Assembly (NCBI RefSeq): GCF_001194135.2 | Contig: NC_068997.1 | Location: 17,485,190-17,532,086 of the forward strand | DNA length: 46,897 nucleotides | Reading direction: 5' to 3' | Source of the DNA: Octopus bimaculoides | Lineage: Eukaryota | In this document: one piece after another, positions 1,099-34,409 of the stretch | How positions within the stretch are numbered: position 1 is the first letter of the stretch | Layout: each line of letters opens with the position of its first letter | Notes under the pieces: model-generated | Seen by the model: the letters and a program-made list of their open reading frames with translations, nothing else | The model's database searches: none | What the model was told of the DNA's origin: nothing | Position numbers and translations under genes: made by a program

Positions 1099-1800
1099 CA
1101 GGGGTTGGACAAAATAATAGAAACACCAACCATCATAGCATCATAATTCTAAAATATCTATAAAATCGTCAAAGGCTTGTTTTTTGTTTGTTTATTACTA
1201 GTGTTGCTGAATATGTTTTGCAAAAATTGCTTTTTCCTTTCGGATATCATCAGAAAAAGTTAATTAAAATTCATTAAAATAACAGATCTATCGGACTTTC
1301 AAAGAGGACAAATAGTTGGTTCTCGTACGGCAGGTACTAGCGTAACGATAGCAGCCGAAATATTTGGTTTATCAAGAAGTACTGTCTCGAAAGTATCTGA
1401 TCAAATGCATCTTATGGTTGCGGAACCCTTTCCGGAGAGAAACGCAATCTTAATGGATGATAGTGCACCAATTCACTGAATAGCTCGAGAAACATTCTAT
1501 TGAATTTGAACGTCTTATCTGGTCACCACCGTCCCCAGATCTGAATATTATTGAACATTTATAGTGCATTTTCGTAAAACAAATACGGAGTTGATATCCT
1601 CCACTATCATCACTACATGAACTGGAGACTGTTTGAGCTGAAGCATGGACAAAAATTCGCTTGGGAACAATTCAAGCTTTATGCGAGACCATAGCTTGTA
1701 GAATTCAAGCTGTAATTACTGCCAAAGGTGGTCCTGCCCCATATTAAAATTAATTTGTTTGAAATTGTTAAGGTGTCTCCATTACTTTGTCCATCCCCTG
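1099..1800 (+). mobile_element. Non-autonomous Tc1-like DNA transposon, internal-deletion derivative (702 bp)
   Basis: 29-bp TIRs (CAGGGGTTGGACAAAATAATAGAAACACC and CAGGGGATGGACAAAGTAATGGAGACACC on the other strand, 25/29), with TA at 1097-98 and 1801-02. Relic peptides: TDLSDFQRGQIVG...SRSTVSKV, then DDSAPIH, W.PPSPDLNIIEHL and RIQAVITAKGGP. Several stops and frameshifts. Confidence 0.93.
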
Positions 1801-5979: not shown

Positions 5980-6975
5980 NNNNNNNNNNNNNNNNNNNNN
6001 NNNNNNNNNNNNNNNNNNNNNNNNNNNNNNNNNNNNNNNNNNNNNNNNNNNNNNNNNNNNNNNNNNNNNNNNNNNNNNNNNNNNNNNNNNNNNNNNNNNN
6101 NNNNNNNNNNNNNNNNNNNNNNNNNNNNNNNNNNNNNNNNNNNNNNNNNNNNNNNNNNNNNNNNNNNNNNNNNNNNNNNNNNNNNNNNNNNNNNNNNNNN
6201 NNNNNNNNNNNNNNNNNNNNNNNNNNNNNNNNNNNNNNNNNNNNNNNNNNNNNNNNNNNNNNNNNNNNNNNNNNNNNNNNNNNNNNNNNNNNNNNNNNNN
6301 NNNNNNNNNNNNNNNNNNNNNNNNNNNNNNNNNNNNNNNNNNNNNNNNNNNNNNNNNNNNNNNNNNNNNNNNNNNNNNNNNNNNNNNNNNNNNNNNNNNN
6401 NNNNNNNNNNNNNNNNNNNNNNNNNNNNNNNNNNNNNNNNNNNNNNNNNNNNNNNNNNNNNNNNNNNNNNNNNNNNNNNNNNNNNNNNNNNNNNNNNNNN
6501 NNNNNNNNNNNNNNNNNNNNNNNNNNNNNNNNNNNNNNNNNNNNNNNNNNNNNNNNNNNNNNNNNNNNNNNNNNNNNNNNNNNNNNNNNNNNNNNNNNNN
6601 NNNNNNNNNNNNNNNNNNNNNNNNNNNNNNNNNNNNNNNNNNNNNNNNNNNNNNNNNNNNNNNNNNNNNNNNNNNNNNNNNNNNNNNNNNNNNNNNNNNN
6701 NNNNNNNNNNNNNNNNNNNNNNNNNNNNNNNNNNNNNNNNNNNNNNNNNNNNNNNNNNNNNNNNNNNNNNNNNNNNNNNNNNNNNNNNNNNNNNNNNNNN
6801 NNNNNNNNNNNNNNNNNNNNNNNNNNNNNNNNNNNNNNNNNNNNNNNNNNNNNNNNNNNNNNNNNNNNNNNNNNNNNNNNNNNNNNNNNNNNNNNNNNNN
6901 NNNNNNNNNNNNNNNNNNNNNNNNNNNNNNNNNNNNNNNNNNNNNNNNNNNNNNNNNNNNNNNNNNNNNNNNNNN

Positions 6976-9500: not shown

Positions 9501-9635
9501 CGGAGACGTGGCTGTGTGCTATAAGAAGTTTAACTAAGGGCCACATAGTTTCGGGTTCAGTGACATTGTGTGGCATCTTGGATAAGTCTCGTTAGCTGTA
9601 GCTTCGGAACGACCAAAATATTGAGCGGATGAGTA
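9501..9635 (+). mobile_element. tRNA-derived SINE type 1 head, truncated at a mariner insertion
   Basis: A-box-like TGGCTGTGTGCT and B-box-like GGGTTCAGTGAC. Homology stops at the TA at 9634-35. Confidence 0.7.
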
Positions 9636-10685
9636 GGTCTGATTGAGTCGATGAGTAGTTTTGATACTCAGCAACTGAAAAAAAAATTGCAATTAGAATC
9701 GTTTTATGGTCGCTACCTTTGGAAGAAAGGATTTACTGTAATGGCAGCGGCAAAAGAAATTAATTATATGAAAGGCCCAGCAACTGTCAACGAACCTGTA
9801 GCGCAAAACTCGTTCAAAAGTTTCAAGGAAGAGGACACCAACCTCGAAGACAGGCTGAGTTCAAGAAAACCTATTGTGGAAAGTGTGGCCTTTCTTAAAA
9901 TGCTTGAGAAACAATCAAGCTCAAGGATTCGTACATTATCGGCAGATTTTGGTCTTTCAGAAAGCAGCATCAGTTGACACCTCCTTAAGCTCAGCCCTGT
10001 GAACAGACGCTATTGAGAAGGTCCTCATGAACAAACCGGTGATCAGGCTCAAAGACGTGTGAATATTTACAAACAACTGACAAATACTGAAGAAGTCTAT
10101 TTGTGACGTCAAATTGTAAGTAGAGATAAAAGATATGGATTTATGTAAGCGTCCAAATAAGATATATCAGTGGCTTCGTTCAGGTCAGGCTCCAAAAACG
10201 TGTTTCAAATGAAGGCAGTTTGAGCAGAATGTGATGTTGTGTGATTGGTGGAATTTCGAGGGGGCGTTGCCCTTTGAGCTTGACACAGATGTGAATAGTA
10301 AGCTTTATGCTTAACAGCTACACTGAATACATAATTCTTTGATAGGCTGCTAACCAGTTGGGCCAATCGAAGAGCACGCTTCAGCAGCTTGACAATGTCT
10401 TAGCACAAATTGCCTACAGTCCACACCTTGCTCTATCAGAATTCCAACTTCTCCGAACAATGGTTTATTCCATGCACGGACGGTGGTTCAACAATGTGGA
10501 TGAGGCGGAAAACGGGCGAAGGAAATTTTAGCCTCTAACCCAGCTGAATATCATAAGCGTGGAATTGATAGCAGACAAAACAATACAACGGGATATATTT
10601 TGATGAATAAAAGCTTTTCGTGTTTAAGTTGTTTGAATTAATAATTAAAGATCACAGCACAGAAAAATCATTTGACTCAACCAAC
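9636..10685 (+). pseudogene. Decayed mariner transposon (DD34D-type clade) with imperfect TIRs
   Basis: N-terminal HTH-like ORF 9651-9977 (KKGFTVMAAAKEIN...LEDRLSSRKP). Also EGPHEQT (WVPHEL motif), VMLCDWWNFEG, QQLDNV and AYSPHLALSEFQLLRTM (YSPDLAPSD motif). The ends share TTGAGTC.ATGA in inverted orientation with TA outside. Many stops and an internal deletion. Confidence 0.88.
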
Positions 10686-11079: not shown

Positions 11080-11274
11080 CGTGGAAAATAGCGAAATATG
11101 AGCGCCAAGAAGTGTTTCGGCATAAGCAAAGTTTCGGTTAGTTAAAACATATTTGTAACATATTTCAACTGCTAAAAGACAAATTTACTGCAGTTACCAT
11201 AAAGAAAATATTTTTCTTATATTAAAAAGGTGTAAAAACACACTATTGGCGCTAATCTTTCGTTATTTTCCACG
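11080..11274. mobile_element. MITE-like element with 29-bp TIRs
   Basis: CGTGGAAAATAGCGAAATATGAGCGCCAA at 11080 versus TTGGCGCTAATCTTTCGTTATTTTCCACG ending 11274 (26/29 complementary). No clear TSD. Confidence 0.65.
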
Positions 11275-11452
11275 ATCGGGCGATCTCCCAACGCAAATCG
11301 GTCAACATTGTTGACTATAATTTACATAAAGCAATTGCTTTACAGGATTTGTTCAGAGTTTCCTCTCTTAGGTACTTCTCATTGATAAAAGCCAACTATC
11401 TTGGAACATTGCTGTTTGGGTATCCTGATAAATGGTGACAATTAAGAAATGG

Positions 11453-11578
11453 GGTGTTTACACACCTTTTTACCGCAAGAGAAATAATTTCTCTACGGTA
11501 ACTGCTGTGAATTTGTCTTTTAGTAGTTGAAATATGACACAAACATGTTTTACTTAACCTAAATTTTGTTTGGCGCTA
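11453..11578 (-). repeat. Inverted copy of the interior of the 11080-11274 element
   Basis: About 80% ungapped identity over about 120 nt to the reverse complement of 11124-11243, ending in TTGGCGCTA, the inner part of the TIR. Confidence 0.8.
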
Positions 11579-17925: not shown

Positions 17926-18311
17926 TCTTTTACTTATTTCAGTCATTTGACTGTGGCCGTGCTGGAGCACCGCCTTTAGTCGGACAAATCGACCCCAAAG
18001 ACTTATTCTCTGTAAGCTTACTACTTATTCCAACCCTCTTTGCCGAACTGCTAACTTACAAGGAAACAAACACACCAACATCGGTTACCAAGCGATAGTG
18101 GGGGCAAGAACAGACACAGACACACAAGTACATGCATATATATGCACGATAGTCTGCTTTCAGTATCAGTCTACCAAATCCCCCCACAAGGCTTTGGTCG
18201 GCCCGAGGCTACAGTAGAAGACACTCTCCCAAGTTGCCGCACAGTGGGACTTTAAACGAAACCATGTGGTTTGAGAAGGAAGGTTCTCGCCACACAGCTA
18301 CCCCTGCTCCC
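17926..18311 (-). mobile_element. tRNA-derived SINE type 1, full length
   Basis: Best-preserved copy: head (plus strand cagtgggac..aaccatgtggtt..cacacagc), body ctaccaaatc..acaaggctttggtcggcccgaggct, internal microsatellite, and 3' end agtcatttgactgtggccgtgctggagcaccgcctttagtcg. Resembles octopus OK/OR-type SINEs; exact family not assigned. Confidence 0.92.
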
Positions 18312-18328
18312 CTAATATATATATATAT

Positions 18329-19052
18329 GGGTTGGAAAAAATAATGGAAACACCTTAAGATTTGAAGCAAATTTATTTTAACATTACAGCTTGAATTATA
18401 CAAGCTATGGACTCATACAAAGTTTGAACTGTTTCCAAAGGAATTTTTATTTATCCATTCTTCTGCTAAAACAGTCTCCAGGTCTTGTAGTGATTATGGT
18501 GGAGGATATTGACTAATTATATGTCTTTCTAAAATGCACCAGATATGTTCAATAGTTTTGAGATCTGAGGACTGTGGTGGCCAGATATGATGTTCAACTT
18601 CACTAGAATGTTTCTCGTGCCATTCAGTACCAAATTTAACTGTATTAATTGATGCATTATCATCCTGCGAAACTGCGTTTCCCTCTGGAAACAGTTCCGC
18701 AACCATAGAATGAATATGATTAGATAAAATGCTTAAGTAGTCTTGAATATTAATTCTGCCATAAATAGAAACCATTGGACAGGCGGTTTCCAAGTTATAG
18801 CTACCTTAATCATCGCAGATCATTGAAAGTACTGTTTATCTGATTGCAGCCCTCCCACGAAATCCGGCTTTGTGCAACTTTCGGCGAACAGTCTTTTGGG
18901 AGTTGTATTTTTGTGATCCTTTCTAACAATTCGCGTAAGAGTCCGACGGTCCCTATCCGAAAGTTTTGGTTTTCTTCCGGAATTTTGTTTCGACGAGGAG
19001 GTTTTTCCCACTTTCTCAAAGGCTGTCATTACTTTTGAGACAGTACTTCTTC
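18329..19052 (-). pseudogene. 5'-truncated Tc1-like transposon, same family as 1099-1800, D-x36-E spacing
   Basis: TIR GGGTTGGAAAAAATAATGGAAACACC at 18329-18354. Relic peptides: RSTVSKVMTAFEKVGKTSSSKQNSGRKPKLSDRDRRTL; KTVRRKLHKAGFRGRAAIR; PMVSIYGRINIQDY...QDDNAS...WPPQSSDLKTIEHIW. Two internal deletions. Confidence 0.93.
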
Positions 19053-20005
19053 CATAATATCGCTCCACCCGCTTCATATCCTTTCCATATACAGATCACA
19101 TCGTACTGTACTGCGTAGACTTCTCACTGACTTTCCGGGAAGTAGTTAACATTCGTATTGCCCAGTAGTTACAATAAAGTAGTTATAAACGTCTCAAAAC
19201 TCAACTGCTCGTCCGGAAAGTTTTTATTGAAAGGATATATATTCATCACCTCACAATTGTATGGAACTTAATACGGAATGTCTTCTGACTTGCATGCCGC
19301 AAAGATTTTCTTGAGTTCTAGTAAGTTTCTATAAGTTGTAGTAGGTTCCTTACTTTCAGAGCAATGTATTTTACCAGAAAGATTCTTAGAGATTCTGAAC
19401 CGCTCAATCCGCTACAAACATTCTTACTCGAATGAGGGTGAATTGCGTTGGTCGATAAGTTTGTATTAACGCCCAAACTATCTTCACATTTATTCTGCAC
19501 TTTCAATGTCCCTGTGTGTTAAGAAAATTTGGACTGGCTTCCATCTTTAGTTGTAAGCTACGGGTTGATAGACCACCGGGCACATCAGAGACCATTGCAA
19601 TGTTGGCGTTTTTCTTATTTTGATATTCGCAAGGCACTGGTTATATTTACTGTGAAGTTAATTATCTCCCCTGTGTTCTTCGCTGTCTTTTTCTAAATGC
19701 GCTTTTTCATTATAAAGTCATTTGCATCGGACGCAGTTAACAAAACTCGTTGTTGTTTCTAACAGCTTGATAAACTGCGAAGTAATTAATTTTCGTCCAG
19801 GAAAGCTTGGGTAGCTCTATTTCGCAAGACTTGAGGCTTTTATTATGATAACAGACAGATAGACAGAAAAAAACACACGCACGCACGCCCACGTACACAC
19901 ACACATTCATACGTACATACAAACACACACATACACATACACACACACATATATACATATGTATGTATAGATGTACAGAGGGAAAATATTAGAGACTGAT
20001 GAGAA

Positions 20006-20410
20006 CTTTTATCTTGTACGTGTCTTTCAATCATTAGACTGCGGTCATGCTGGGGCACCACCTTCAAGAATTTTAGTCGAAAGAATCGACCCCACAGCTT
20101 ATGTTCTTTAACCCTGTTATTTATTCGATCACTTTCTTTTGCTGAAGCGCTACGTTACGGGGACTTAAACGCAGCAGTATTGGTTGTCACGTGGTGGTGG
20201 TGGTGGTGGTGGGCAAACGCAGACACAAAGACACATGCACAAACATACACATTCACACACAGACACACAATACATAGGACAGGGTTCTTTCAGTCTCCAC
20301 CTACCAAGTTCACACCAGCAAACGCATATTGAAGTTGCCATGCTGTGGGACCGAACCTGGAAGTATATGGTTGCGAAACAAAAGACGCACCGCACAGGCA
20401 AGCCTGCGAC
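20006..20410 (-). mobile_element. tRNA-derived SINE type 1, near full length with internal deletion
   Basis: Collinear with 17926-18311 from the 3' end (tttcaatcattagactgcggtcatgctggggcaccacc) to the head (ctgtgggaccgaacctggaa). Confidence 0.88.
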
Positions 20411-29124: not shown

Positions 29125-30518
29125 TTATTTATTTATTTATTTATACACATGTATGTAACACAACAGTGTACATATATATACACATATGTAAGTATTCAAA
29201 ATACAGTCATCCATACTTACACATATGCACCTACGTCATCACTACATGTGTACGTATATATGATAAATGAACCCCCATTTCATCTTTAAATCACTCGATG
29301 CTCGTATAGATCAGACGCCTGCATAAAGCTTTTCGTGTCTTATATTTTTGGCAGATCAAGTCTGGTGACAATGTACTTACCCACGCAGGATTGTTTGTTT
29401 AGAAATAAGGACCCACATGAAAAAAGTAATATGCTCTTAAACGTTTGCGAACTTCAATATATATTTGACCACTGATATAGTTCCATCCAAAGAAAACTGA
29501 CAATATCCCCAAAGAAAATACTTGTAGCCACACACAAACACTTCCATGTGAGTGTGTATAACAATATATATGCGTGTTCGTGTGTGTGTAGATACCTAGC
29601 TTGCTATATATATATATATATATNNNNNNNNNNNNNNNNNNNNNNNNNNNNNNNNNNNNNNNNNNNNNNNNNNNNNNNNNNNNNNNNNNNNNNNNNNNNN
29701 NNNNNNNNNNNNNNNNNNNNNNNNNNNNNNNNNNNNNNNNNNNNNNNNNNNNNNNNNNNNNNNNNNNNNNNNNNNNNNNNNNNNNNNNNNNNNNNNNNNN
29801 NNNNNNNNNNNNNNNNNNNNNNNNNNNNNNNNNNNNNNNNNNNNNNNNNNNNNNNNNNNNNNNNNNNNNNNNNNNNNNNNNNNNNNNNNNNNNNNNNNNN
29901 NNNNNNNNNNNNNNNNNNNNNNNNNNNNNNNNNNNNNNNNNNNNNNNNNNNNNNNNNNNNNNNNNNNNNNNNNNNNNNNNNNNNNNNNNNNNNNNNNNNN
30001 NNNNNNNNNNNNNNNNNNNNNNNNNNNNNNNNNNNNNNNNNNNNNNNNNNNNNNNNNNNNNNNNNNNNNNNNNNNNNNNNNNNNNNNNNNNNNNNNNNNN
30101 NNNNNNNNNNNNNNNNNNNNNNNNNNNNNNNNNNNNNNNNNNNNNNNNNNNNNNNNNNNNNNNNNNNNNNNNNNNNNNNNNNNNNNNNNNNNNNNNNNNN
30201 NNNNNNNNNNNNNNNNNNNNNNNNNNNNNNNNNNNNNNNNNNNNNNNNNNNNNNNNNNNNNNNNNNNNNNNNNNNNNNNNNNNNNNNNNNNNNNNNNNNN
30301 NNNNNNNNNNNNNNNNNNNNNNNNNNNNNNNNNNNNNNNNNNNNNNNNNNNNNNNNNNNNNNNNNNNNNNNNNNNNNNNNNNNNNNNNNNNNNNNNNNNN
30401 NNNNNNNNNNNNNNNNNNNNNNNNNNNNNNNNNNNNNNNNNNNNNNNNNNNNNNNNNNNNNNNNNNNNNNNNNNNNNNNNNNNNNNNNNNNNNNNNNNNN
30501 NNNNNNNNNNNNNNNNNN

Positions 30519-31103: not shown

Positions 31104-31160
31104 ATATATGATCACATATATAAAAAAAAACTCCGCACCGAAAGCACACANNNNNNNNNN

Positions 31161-32511: not shown

Positions 32512-32867
32512 AGGAGTGAGCGTGTGATAAGACTGAGCGTGTGGTTGCTTCTCAACCACATGGATCTAGGTTCAGTTACTATATCTACGGGCCAAGTGGA
32601 TCTGCTAGATAACTTAAAGAAGCCCGTCGTATGTGTGTATGTGTGTGTATACGTGCGTGTGTGTGTGTGTTGGGGGGAGGGGGTCTGTGTTTATCCCGAA
32701 CATCGCTTGACAACCAGTGTTGGTGTGTTTACGTCTCCGTAACTTAGCATTTCAGAAAAAGATATGTACAGTATGTACAGGAGTCCAATTATTCGACTAA
32801 AAATTCTTCAAAATACTGCCCCAACATGGCCGCGGTCTAATGACTGAAACAAGCGAAAGATAAAAGA
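32512..32867 (+). mobile_element. tRNA-derived SINE type 1, full extent with internal deletions
   Basis: ttctcaaccacatgg..ggttcag...aaagaagcccgtcgtatgtgtg...catcgcttgacaacc.gtgttggtgtgtttacgtctccgtaacttagc...catggccgcggtctaatgactgaaacaagcgaaagataaaaga. Confidence 0.88.
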
Positions 32868-33002
32868 TGAAAGCTAATCTTATGTTTTAACATCTAAAGT
32901 AAAGTTTGCGAGTCTCCAGATAAACGACATCAATGTTTCGTATGTGTATTTCGTGTGCAAGATTCTTGATGTGGATACGTGTGTTGAAAGAAATACAATT
33001 AA

Positions 33003-33302
33003 ACCTTGGGAGAGGCATTATGCCGGTAATGAACACACGCACTGGTTCAGTCCTTTATTAATTTAATTTATATAGTTTTTTGTTAAATTATTTCATTGCA
33101 CTCTTGCAATCTCTTCAGTAACTTGTCTCTCCACTTCCATTTATTTTGAATATATTCAAAATAAATGGAAGTGGAGAGACAAGTTACTGAAGAGATTGCA
33201 AGAGTGCAATGAAATAATTTAACAAAAAACTATATAAATTAAATTAATAAAGGACTGAACCAGTGCGTGTGTTTATTACCGGCATAATGCCTCTCCCAAG
33301 GT
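33003..33302. mobile_element. 300-bp spacerless hairpin (fold-back) element between TTAA duplications
   Basis: 32996-33152 is the reverse complement of 33153-33309 with a single G/T mismatch (33031/33274). TTAA lies at 32999-33002 and 33303-33306. The palindrome itself is certain; the transposon origin is inferred. Confidence 0.8.
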
Positions 33303-33386
33303 TTAATTGACATCAATGTTGTTTTACGTCATTGCAAGCATTTAATAATTGACGATTATCCAAGGGTACTCCTCTCCATATCATCA

Positions 33387-33441
<55 letters not shown>

Positions 33442-33559: not shown

Positions 33560-33870
33560 AACTCTGTCGAGGGTTCTTTTTCTGGTGCTGAAGCTGTACC
33601 ACATAGAAAACAAAATCACTCAATACACCCTGAAAAAATATTGGCGTTCATGAGGAACACCCCGCCGTGGAAAACGTGACAAGGCATACCGATCTCTGCG
33701 CAATCCTTCGGCTCGCCAACTCCTATAAAACTTTCCAGCCCACGCGGCCTTGGAAAAACTAGGTTAAATGATGTGGTTGATGATGATGATGACGATGACG
33801 ACAACAATAATGATTGTGACGACAACGATGATGATGATGATAATGTAATCGACGACGATGATGATGATGA
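33560..33870 (+). mobile_element. SINE/LINE-tail type 4, 3' part ending in a (GAT)n tail
   Basis: attggcgttcatgaggaacaccccgccgtggaaaac...ccagcccacgcggccttggaaaaactaggttaaatgatg resembles the recalled octopus SINE tail (ttggcgttaggaagggcatccagccgtagaaac...ccaacccatgccagcatggaaaacggacgttaaatgatgatg). It runs straight into GAT/GAC repeats. Confidence 0.65.
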
Positions 33871-34409
33871 TAAGCCCGTTATGATGTGTAATGGACGGTC
33901 AGTTTCAAACCATGTCTGCTTAATGATTGTTGTTTTGTCTTTTAAATTTATGTTTTTGCCTCTTGATGCTTTCATCTTATCAGGGAAATGGTCAAGATTA
34001 TGTAATTCCACGAATGTGATAATATATTCAAGAATATATTCTGAAATCGATAGAATCTACAAAAGTTACCCGGAACTGACGAAATACCTATCACATTATG
34101 TTTTGAACTGCTAGAAATAGCAGCCATTTATGTCACATCACAATTAAGTGCAGAACTCTTTGGATTAAATTGTTCTGGACACTTTGCGATTGGGAGAATG
34201 AGAGAAACTGAAGGATTACGATATTTATGTAAATGTGGACTTTGCACTTCGTTATTCCAAGGTTGAAATTGGACATGCCAAAGTAGTAGGGTGAATATAA
34301 TCGACTATATATAAGTTGAAGACAGTATTTCCAAATGGTCACGGCCCAATTAATGAAAAAATAGTAAAATGATTTACACGGGAGCGATTATAACAAATAT
34401 GGCGACAGT

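What the first reader, a model, noticed from the sequence alone, without database searches (positions are those of the whole stretch)
32996..33309. 314-bp spacerless, near-perfect palindrome (156/157 bp), parsed as a 300-bp TTAA-flanked hairpin element
Seen: the arms meet with no loop at 33152/33153 (TTTTGAATA|TATTCAAAA) and differ at one position, a G-T pair. The outer bases read CAA-TTAA-[ACCTTGGG...CCCAAGGT]-TTAA-TTG, so removing the element and one TTAA leaves CAATTAATTG, a self-palindromic target. Flanks on both sides are unique and gap-free. Established: long spacerless palindromes extrude cruciforms and are unstable, so near-identity implies recent origin or arm-to-arm conversion. A roughly 150-bp perfect RNA stem is an ideal Dicer (endo-siRNA/hpRNA) and ADAR substrate. 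Inference: a young fold-back transposon, possibly supplying dsRNA from either strand inside a host intron. This is the best novelty candidate in the window.
Basis: partly seen in the sequence, partly recalled or inferred. Interest (0 to 1): 0.78.

Follow-up and report, generated by a model that had tools for sequence, protein, structure and literature searches.

The report
Spacerless 314-bp palindrome, probable fold-back transposon
A real, almost perfect 314-bp DNA palindrome sits in repeat-rich non-coding DNA of an unidentified invertebrate-like genome; it most likely is one copy of an already known kind of small hairpin-shaped transposon, but its mobility, its reality in raw reads and any RNA role could not be tested here.

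Summary
Arms 32996-33152 and 33153-33309 are 157 nt each, have no spacer and differ at one position (33031 G / 33274 T). Complementarity stops at both outer edges, and the nearest assembly gaps are more than 1.8 kb away.

The interpretation remains open. TTAA is only one of four symmetric duplication parses (TTAA, AATT, TA, AT). Because the palindrome runs 3 bp past TTAA, the boundary is at best about 4:1 evidence for a TTAA-specific insertion. The ends (5'-ACCTT...AAGGT-3') fit neither the piggyBac signature (CCCTT-type) nor the Kolobok signature (RR..YY) exactly.

No second copy exists in the window. Copy number, empty sites and read support are therefore untested. No exon, transposase or viral gene lies nearby, and Rfam gives only sub-threshold generic hairpin hits.

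Best reading (about 0.5): a young whole-element fold-back MITE of the known PALTTAA/Hairpin kind. Rivals are a locus-specific inverted duplication made by fold-back repair (about 0.25) and an assembly artefact (about 0.1). The dsRNA and intron ideas have no support yet. Interest is modest.

The parts
32996..33152 (.). Left arm of the palindrome (157 nt)
33153..33309 (.). Right arm of the palindrome (157 nt), the reverse complement of the left arm with no spacer
33003..33302 (.). Putative 300-bp element under the TTAA parse (5'-ACCTTGGGAGAGG ... CCTCTCCCAAGGT-3'). Under the TA parse it would be 33002-33303.
   Evidence: (enumeration of duplications)
32999..33002 (.). Left TTAA, a candidate target-site duplication. 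It lies inside the palindrome, so it is not independent evidence.
33303..33306 (.). Right TTAA, a candidate target-site duplication
33031..33031 (+). The only non-complementary position: G here opposite T at 33274, a transition difference between the arms
33274..33274 (+). Partner of the mismatch (T)
33137..33168 (.). AT-rich centre: 81% A+T over 32 bp and 90% over the central 20 bp. This composition favours cruciform extrusion.
33056..33095 (.). Very AT-rich block inside the left arm (5-10% G+C), mirrored at 33210-33249. The outer 60 nt of each arm are 40-55% G+C.
33309..33320 (+). Second copy of the 12-bp direct repeat GACATCAATGTT (first copy 32926-32937). It abuts the right edge of the palindrome. 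Significance uncertain.
   Evidence: (D6)

Best explanation
It is one copy of a small, non-coding, whole-element fold-back DNA transposon (a palindromic MITE). Its two roughly 150-bp terminal inverted repeats meet head to head. It is inserted at a TTAA (less likely a TA) in non-coding, repeat-rich DNA.

Elements of this kind are moved in trans by a transposase encoded elsewhere, which binds the two identical ends, cuts the element out and pastes it into a new target. A perfectly symmetric element is thought to arise when repair synthesis that is copying one end of a parent transposon switches template or folds back on itself. One end plus its subterminal sequence is then duplicated in inverted order.

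The 0.64% difference between the arms means a recent origin or insertion, or arm-to-arm correction.

Shown: the palindrome, its sharp edges, the flanking TTAA/TA, the lack of coding capacity, and the transposon-rich surroundings. Inferred: that it is multi-copy and mobile, which transposase moves it, and how it arose.
For: - The palindrome is perfectly symmetric with sharp edges and unrelated unique flanks.
- The 300-bp size, absence of an ORF and absence of protein relatives fit a MITE.
- TTAA, or the nested TA, flanks a G+C-richer terminal segment, with an AT-rich interior.
- The first five bases under the TTAA parse, ACCTT, differ by one base from the commonest piggyBac end motif CCCTT (PMC10813416).
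- The window is full of DNA-transposon debris: Tc1/mariner remnants and a second, older long-inverted-repeat element at 11124-11571.
- MITE families whose whole sequence is a fold-back and that carry TTAA or TA duplications are already documented: PALTTAA1_CE, PALTTAA3_CE, PALTA1/2/4_CE and Hairpin. Template switching during gap repair has been proposed as their origin (PMC3814204).
Against: - No second copy was seen anywhere. This is weak evidence: only 41 kb of this genome was available, and the species is missing from the collections.
- The ends ACC...GGT match neither the piggyBac CCC...GGG signature nor the Kolobok RR...YY signature.
- The palindrome runs 3 bp beyond TTAA. That needs a coincidence seen at 3.8% of TTAA sites here, so the TTAA evidence is at most about 4:1 and about neutral once the free choice of offset is allowed for.
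- There are no repeated sub-motifs within an arm that could mark transposase-binding sites.
- A 12-bp direct repeat brackets a larger 383-bp unit and does not fit a simple TTAA insertion.
Confidence: 0.5

Rival explanations
1. A locus-specific inverted duplication that is not mobile. A double-strand break or stalled fork exposed a short AT-rich self-complementary stretch (...GAATATATTC...). The 3' end folded back and copied about 150 nt of its own strand, or a hairpin-capped end was replicated. It then rejoined the chromosome. TTAA near the edge is coincidence.
For: - The centre is spacerless and lies on an AT-rich self-complementary core, as expected for fold-back priming or replication of a hairpin-capped end (review PMC7999016).
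- The palindrome is single-copy in everything that could be searched.
- The termini lack the piggyBac and Kolobok signatures.
- The TTAA boundary is statistically near-neutral.
- A 12-bp direct repeat abuts the right edge, the kind of microhomology or duplication that repair events leave.
Against: - Fold-back repair normally yields large inverted duplications with loss of the distal sequence. It does not normally yield a neat 157-bp insertion between two intact unique flanks, which would need two precise template switches.
- The exact symmetry ends on a TTAA/TA next to a G+C-richer end, which resembles a transposon terminus.
- The flanks show no other homology.
Confidence: 0.25
2. An assembly or sequencing artefact. 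A chimeric fold-back read or a gap-filling step wrote an inverted copy of a real 157-bp segment into the consensus.
For: - The scaffold is fragmented, with 14 N runs that all lie beside microsatellites.
- Palindromes are hard to assemble and sequence (PMC4940405).
- No reads could be inspected.
Against: - The palindrome lies more than 1.8 kb from any gap, inside an 8.7-kb contiguous stretch.
- Missed-adapter or fold-back chimeras give read-length palindromes or contig-end inversions. They do not give a 157-bp arm joined to an unrelated unique right flank.
- The arms differ at one base, which an artefactual copy of the same reads would not normally produce.
Confidence: 0.1
3. A functional hairpin-RNA gene (endo-siRNA or miRNA source, or ADAR substrate), whatever its origin. 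Transcription through the palindrome would give a 157-bp perfect stem that Dicer processes.
For: - The predicted RNA stem is -265 kcal/mol with one G.U on the + strand.
- Long-hairpin miRNA models of Rfam align to it by structure alone.
- Palindromic MITEs are known sources of small RNAs, for example MADE1 and miR-548, as are the Drosophila hpRNA loci (my own knowledge, not tested here).
Against: - All Rfam matches are below their gathering scores and match both strands equally, so they reflect generic hairpin shape and not family membership.
- No evidence of transcription, a host gene or an intron was found.
- No conservation data exist.
- A structure this young has had little time to be selected.
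Confidence: 0.07

Closest known systems
Whole-element fold-back MITEs: PALTTAA1_CE and PALTTAA3_CE (TTAA duplication), PALTA1/2/4_CE (TA), and Hairpin of Arabidopsis
   Same: A small non-coding element whose entire sequence is a fold-back, with a TTAA or TA duplication, and no relation between arm length and the short ends of autonomous relatives (PMC3814204).
   Different: No sequence similarity was tested or is expected. Those elements are defined as multi-copy families, whereas only one copy is seen here. This one has no central loop and its arms are 99.4% identical.
piggyBac-superfamily non-autonomous elements
   Same: A TTAA on each side. The first five bases, ACCTT, resemble the commonest end motif CCCTT. 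Long inverted ends (up to 528 bp) occur in some invertebrate piggyBac elements (PMC10813416).
   Different: The first base is A, not C, so the ends are ACC...GGT instead of CCC...GGG. No piggyBac transposase remnant lies in the window. There are no repeated subterminal binding motifs of the kind seen in piggyBac and piggyBat.
Kolobok superfamily
   Same: TTAA-specific 4-bp duplication (PMC9587614).
   Different: Kolobok ends are 5'-RR...YY-3', whereas this element has 5'-AC...GT-3'.
Human palindromic AT-rich repeats (PATRR11, PATRR22 and others)
   Same: Nearly perfect palindromes of several hundred bp without a spacer, not known to be transposons, cruciform-prone, and difficult to sequence (PMC4940405).
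   Different: PATRRs are more than 90% A+T. This palindrome is 67.5% A+T, the same as its surroundings.
Drosophila FB (Foldback) and Galileo elements
   Same: Very long inverted ends that can make up most of the element.
   Different: From my own knowledge, FB ends are built of tandem sub-repeats with a 9-bp duplication, and Galileo has a 7-bp duplication. Here there are no sub-repeats and no 5-12-bp duplication at any boundary.

Membership tests
Whole-element fold-back MITE (PALTTAA/PALTA/Hairpin type) | The entire element is an inverted repeat; it is small (under about 800 bp) and non-coding | tested here: met
   Two arms of 157 nt with no spacer. All frames carry stops and there is no protein relative.
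Whole-element fold-back MITE (PALTTAA/PALTA/Hairpin type) | A short target-site duplication flanks the inverted ends | tested here: inconclusive
   TTAA, AATT, TA and AT are all possible. All of them lie inside the palindrome, so none is independent evidence. The likelihood ratio is at most about 4.
Whole-element fold-back MITE (PALTTAA/PALTA/Hairpin type) | Multi-copy dispersed family with different flanks, and empty sites in relatives | not testable with these tools
   No second copy in the 41 kb of non-N window. The species is absent from the searchable collections.
piggyBac superfamily (non-autonomous member) | TTAA target-site duplication | tested here: met
   TTAA at 32999-33002 and 33303-33306.
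piggyBac superfamily (non-autonomous member) | Ends 5'-CCC...GGG-3' (motifs CCCTT, CCCTC, CCCAT or CACTA) | tested here: not met
   The ends are ACCTT...AAGGT, which is one base off CCCTT (motifs from PMC10813416).
piggyBac superfamily (non-autonomous member) | An autonomous partner with the same ends that encodes a piggyBac transposase | not testable with these tools
   None in the window. The transposase fragments in the ORFs I scanned are all Tc1/mariner-type.
Kolobok superfamily | TTAA duplication together with 5'-RR...YY-3' ends | tested here: not met
   TTAA is present, but the ends are AC...GT (definition from PMC9587614).
Tc1/mariner-derived (Stowaway-like) MITE | TA duplication and ends similar to a Tc1/mariner element of the same genome | tested here: inconclusive
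   A TA parse is possible, giving the element 33002-33303. The arm shows no similarity to any Tc1/mariner remnant in the window. The rest of the genome was not available.
Drosophila-type Foldback (FB) element | Inverted ends made of tandem sub-repeats, with a 9-bp duplication | tested here: not met
   No repeated 7-9-mers in an arm beyond the shuffle level. No duplication longer than 4 bp at any boundary.
Palindromic AT-rich repeat (PATRR-like fragile palindrome) | Spacerless near-perfect palindrome of several hundred bp | tested here: met
Palindromic AT-rich repeat (PATRR-like fragile palindrome) | More than 90% A+T | tested here: not met
   The arm is 32.5% G+C against 35% for the window. 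Only the central 20 bp reach 90% A+T.
Known hairpin RNA family (Rfam miRNA or other) | Score at or above the family's gathering threshold | tested here: not met
   There are 0 hits at gathering. The sub-threshold hits match both strands equally.
hpRNA / endo-siRNA locus | Transcribed, and yields 21-22-nt duplex small RNAs | not testable with these tools
   No sequencing runs were available.

The most novel reading that the evidence does not exclude
The palindrome is single-copy and not a transposon. It would be a germline-transmitted, spacerless 314-bp palindrome of ordinary base composition, created recently by fold-back repair and still intact. That would make it a natural invertebrate counterpart of the human PATRR fragile sites, and possibly a newborn hairpin-RNA locus.
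Probability: 0.12. Interest if true: 0.55.

Novelty: new member of a known kind. Interest (0 to 1): 0.27.

Why it matters
If it is a fold-back MITE, it is one more family in a well-known class. It would matter mainly for repeat annotation of this genome, and as a marker that a TTAA-specific transposase was active recently.

It would be of more interest if it proved to be single-copy. A long spacerless palindrome is expected to be unstable. A fresh one caught in a germline genome would show how such structures are born, and whether they seed hairpin-RNA genes or chromosome breakage.

Either way, it is a useful test locus for assembly accuracy at palindromes.

Tried and rejected
- **Read support.** I did not try to get round this.
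- **Exact-word scans.** I scanned four different 20-28-mers of the arm in metagenome contigs, prokaryotic genomes and viral contigs. All gave 0 hits.
- **Protein search with the arm.** All three frames of the palindrome joined as one query found nothing at E <= 10.
- **Identifying the species.** A single Tc1 fragment found no candidate. A composite transposase query found only 63-71% relatives: an unnamed metaclust protein, Oratosquilla oratoria and Octopus bimaculoides. The species is therefore unidentified and not in the collection.
- **The look-up of encoding contigs.** Two ORFs next to or overlapping the palindrome are not on record.
- **Paralogous empty site.** The left flank contains an old interspersed repeat (32683-32866), but it ends 130 bp before the palindrome, so it gives no empty-site comparison.
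- **tRNA or SINE origin.** No tRNA-like sequence was found.
- **Virus hairpin end or nearby transposase.** No Pfam domain was found in ORFs within about 3 kb.
- **Literal search of papers for the terminal 12-13-mers.** The only notable hit is the Meloidogyne hapla chromosome-end 16-mer, which shares CCCAAGGTTTAA. I judge this a coincidence, because that sequence is a tandem telomere-like repeat in an unrelated genome type.
- **Degenerate extension of the palindrome, or homology between the flanks.** None was found.

Full report
**1. Observation**

- Positions 32996-33152 and 33153-33309 are reverse complements of each other over 157 nt with no spacer.
- The single exception is G at 33031 opposite T at 33274. 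This is a transition difference, which pairs as G.T on the + strand and as A.C on the - strand.
- Complementarity ends abruptly at 32995/33310.
- As single-stranded DNA the region folds at -189 kcal/mol, against -35.7 +/- 3.5 for shuffles (z = -43). As RNA the stem is -265 kcal/mol.
- The nearest runs of N are at 31151-31160 and 39924-39933, so the palindrome lies in an 8.7-kb uninterrupted stretch.

**2. Setting**

- The window is 35% G+C, and 9.9% of its non-N bases are short tandem repeats. It is broken by 14 N runs, all beside microsatellites.
- It holds several decayed Tc1/mariner transposase fragments.
- It also holds an old interspersed repeat with three copies and a second, older long-inverted-repeat element at 11124-11571.
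- I found no host exon, transposase or viral gene within about 3 kb of the palindrome. Rfam gave no hit at gathering thresholds and ARAGORN found no tRNA anywhere in the window. 'Inside a host intron' is therefore unsupported.
- The organism could not be identified. The best protein relatives of the transposase fragments are only 63-71% identical, from a mantis shrimp, an octopus and an unnamed metagenomic protein.

**3. Boundaries**

- Four symmetric parses give a direct duplication next to inverted ends: TTAA (element 33003-33302), AATT, TA (element 33002-33303) and AT. Nothing longer than 4 bp works.
- All of these lie inside the palindrome, so they are not independent of it.
- Under the TTAA model, the three further complementary bases (CAA/TTG) must be a coincidence of the target. 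In this window 11 of 291 TTAA sites (3.8%) have such flanks.
- Under a no-transposon model, TTAA at a fixed offset has probability 0.7%.
- The boundary therefore favours a TTAA insertion by about 4:1 at most. It is about neutral once one allows that any offset in the outer 8 bases would have been accepted.

**4. Superfamily signatures**

- piggyBac elements start CCCTT, CCCTC, CCCAT or CACTA (PMC10813416).
- Kolobok elements, the other TTAA-specific superfamily, have 5'-RR...YY-3' ends (PMC9587614).
- This element would start ACCTT and end AAGGT. That is one base from the commonest piggyBac motif, but it fits neither signature.
- An arm contains no repeated 7-9-mers above the shuffle level. 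There are thus no visible arrays of binding motifs such as piggyBac and piggyBat have, and none of the tandem sub-repeats that build Drosophila FB ends (my own knowledge).
- Each arm has a G+C-richer outer 60 nt (40-55% G+C), a 40-nt block of 5-10% G+C, a moderate inner part, and an AT-rich centre (90% A+T over the central 20 bp).

**5. Copies and empty sites**

This is the decisive question, and it could not be answered.
- The arm and its 17-nt end occur nowhere else in the window.
- Four different exact words from the arm gave no hit in the metagenome, prokaryotic-genome or viral collections.
- The arm's translations have no relatives, and flanking ORFs are not on record.
Because the species is absent from the protein collection and none of the DNA collections gave a match, these negatives carry little weight.
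- The old repeat in the left flank stops 130 bp before the palindrome and offers no paralogous empty site.

**6. An unexplained detail**

GACATCAATGTT occurs at 32926-32937 and again at 33309-33320. The second copy starts on the last base of the palindrome. A 12-mer abutting a block in this way has an upstream copy at 0.45% of positions in this window. It was noticed after the fact, and the flanks are otherwise unrelated. If it is meaningful, it brackets a 383-bp unit (58 unique bp plus the palindrome). That would point to a repair-associated event and away from a clean TTAA insertion.

**7. Mechanism**

My preferred reading (about 0.5) is a young whole-element fold-back MITE.
- Such families are documented with TTAA and TA duplications: PALTTAA1_CE, PALTTAA3_CE, PALTA1/2/4_CE and Hairpin.
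- They are thought to arise when gap-repair synthesis copying one transposon end switches template. This duplicates the end and its subterminal region in inverted order (PMC3814204).
- The product has two identical ends, so a transposase encoded elsewhere can move it.
- One difference in 157 paired positions (0.64%) means a recent origin, or correction between the arms.

The main rival (about 0.25) is the same fold-back chemistry acting on ordinary chromosomal DNA at this locus, with no mobility. The spacerless centre on an AT-rich self-complementary core fits fold-back priming or replication of a hairpin-capped end (PMC7999016). However, a neat 157-bp insertion between two intact flanks would need two precise switches.

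An assembly artefact (about 0.1) is disfavoured by three things: the distance from gaps, the unrelated right flank, and the one-base difference between the arms. Without reads it cannot be excluded.

A functional hairpin-RNA role (about 0.07, and not exclusive of the others) has only the structure in its favour. All Rfam hits are below threshold, match both strands equally, and are to generic long-hairpin miRNA models.

**8. Comparison and novelty**

- In its working it resembles the palindromic MITEs. It meets their structural definition, but the multi-copy criterion is untested.
- It is not a canonical piggyBac or Kolobok member by its ends. It is not a Drosophila-type FB element.
- It is not PATRR-like in composition: 67.5% A+T against more than 90% (PMC4940405).
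- If the preferred reading holds, it is a new member of a known kind.
- The most novel reading still open is a single-copy, newly born spacerless palindrome in a germline genome (about 0.12).

**9. Verdict**

The intron and dsRNA parts are unsupported. Interest is modest (0.27). A whole-genome blastn of one arm, plus a look at spanning long reads, would settle it.

Noticed in passing
window 11124-11571: A second, older fold-back-like element. Its arms are about 11124-11250 and 11448-11571, 81% complementary, with a spacer of about 200 nt. It has no clear target-site duplication and no similarity to the 314-bp palindrome.
   Followed up: partly
window 32926-32937 and 33309-33320: Exact 12-bp direct repeat GACATCAATGTT. 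The second copy abuts the right edge of the palindrome. Its empirical frequency is 0.45% per position, but it was noticed post hoc. It might mark a larger 383-bp inserted unit.
   Followed up: partly
window 32683-32866 (+), 17926-18147 (-), 20006-20256 (-): Three diverged copies (66-80% identity) of an unclassified interspersed repeat. The two minus-strand copies lie in direct orientation about 2.1 kb apart and bracket a Tc1-like remnant.
   Followed up: partly
window 1264-1476 (+), 18497-19095 (-), 9633-10528 (+), 43380-43559 (-), 45728-45973 (+): Decayed Tc1/mariner transposase fragments (weak Pfam DDE_3, Transposase_1 and HTH_23 hits). The copy at 1264-1476 joins the HTH region directly to the C-terminal DDE region, so it is an internal-deletion derivative.
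   Followed up: partly
window, all 14 N runs (for example 5980-6975, 29624-30518): Every assembly gap is bordered by a microsatellite, mostly (TA)n or (TG)n types. Three gaps are exactly 10 N and the others are sized. This suggests contigs broken at simple repeats and at least two scaffolding steps.
   Followed up: no
window 33390-33439 and 33778-33871: A perfect (CT)25 microsatellite lies 80 bp to the right of the palindrome. An imperfect (GAT)n tract creates the spurious poly-Asp and poly-Ser ORFs at 33616-34114.
   Followed up: no
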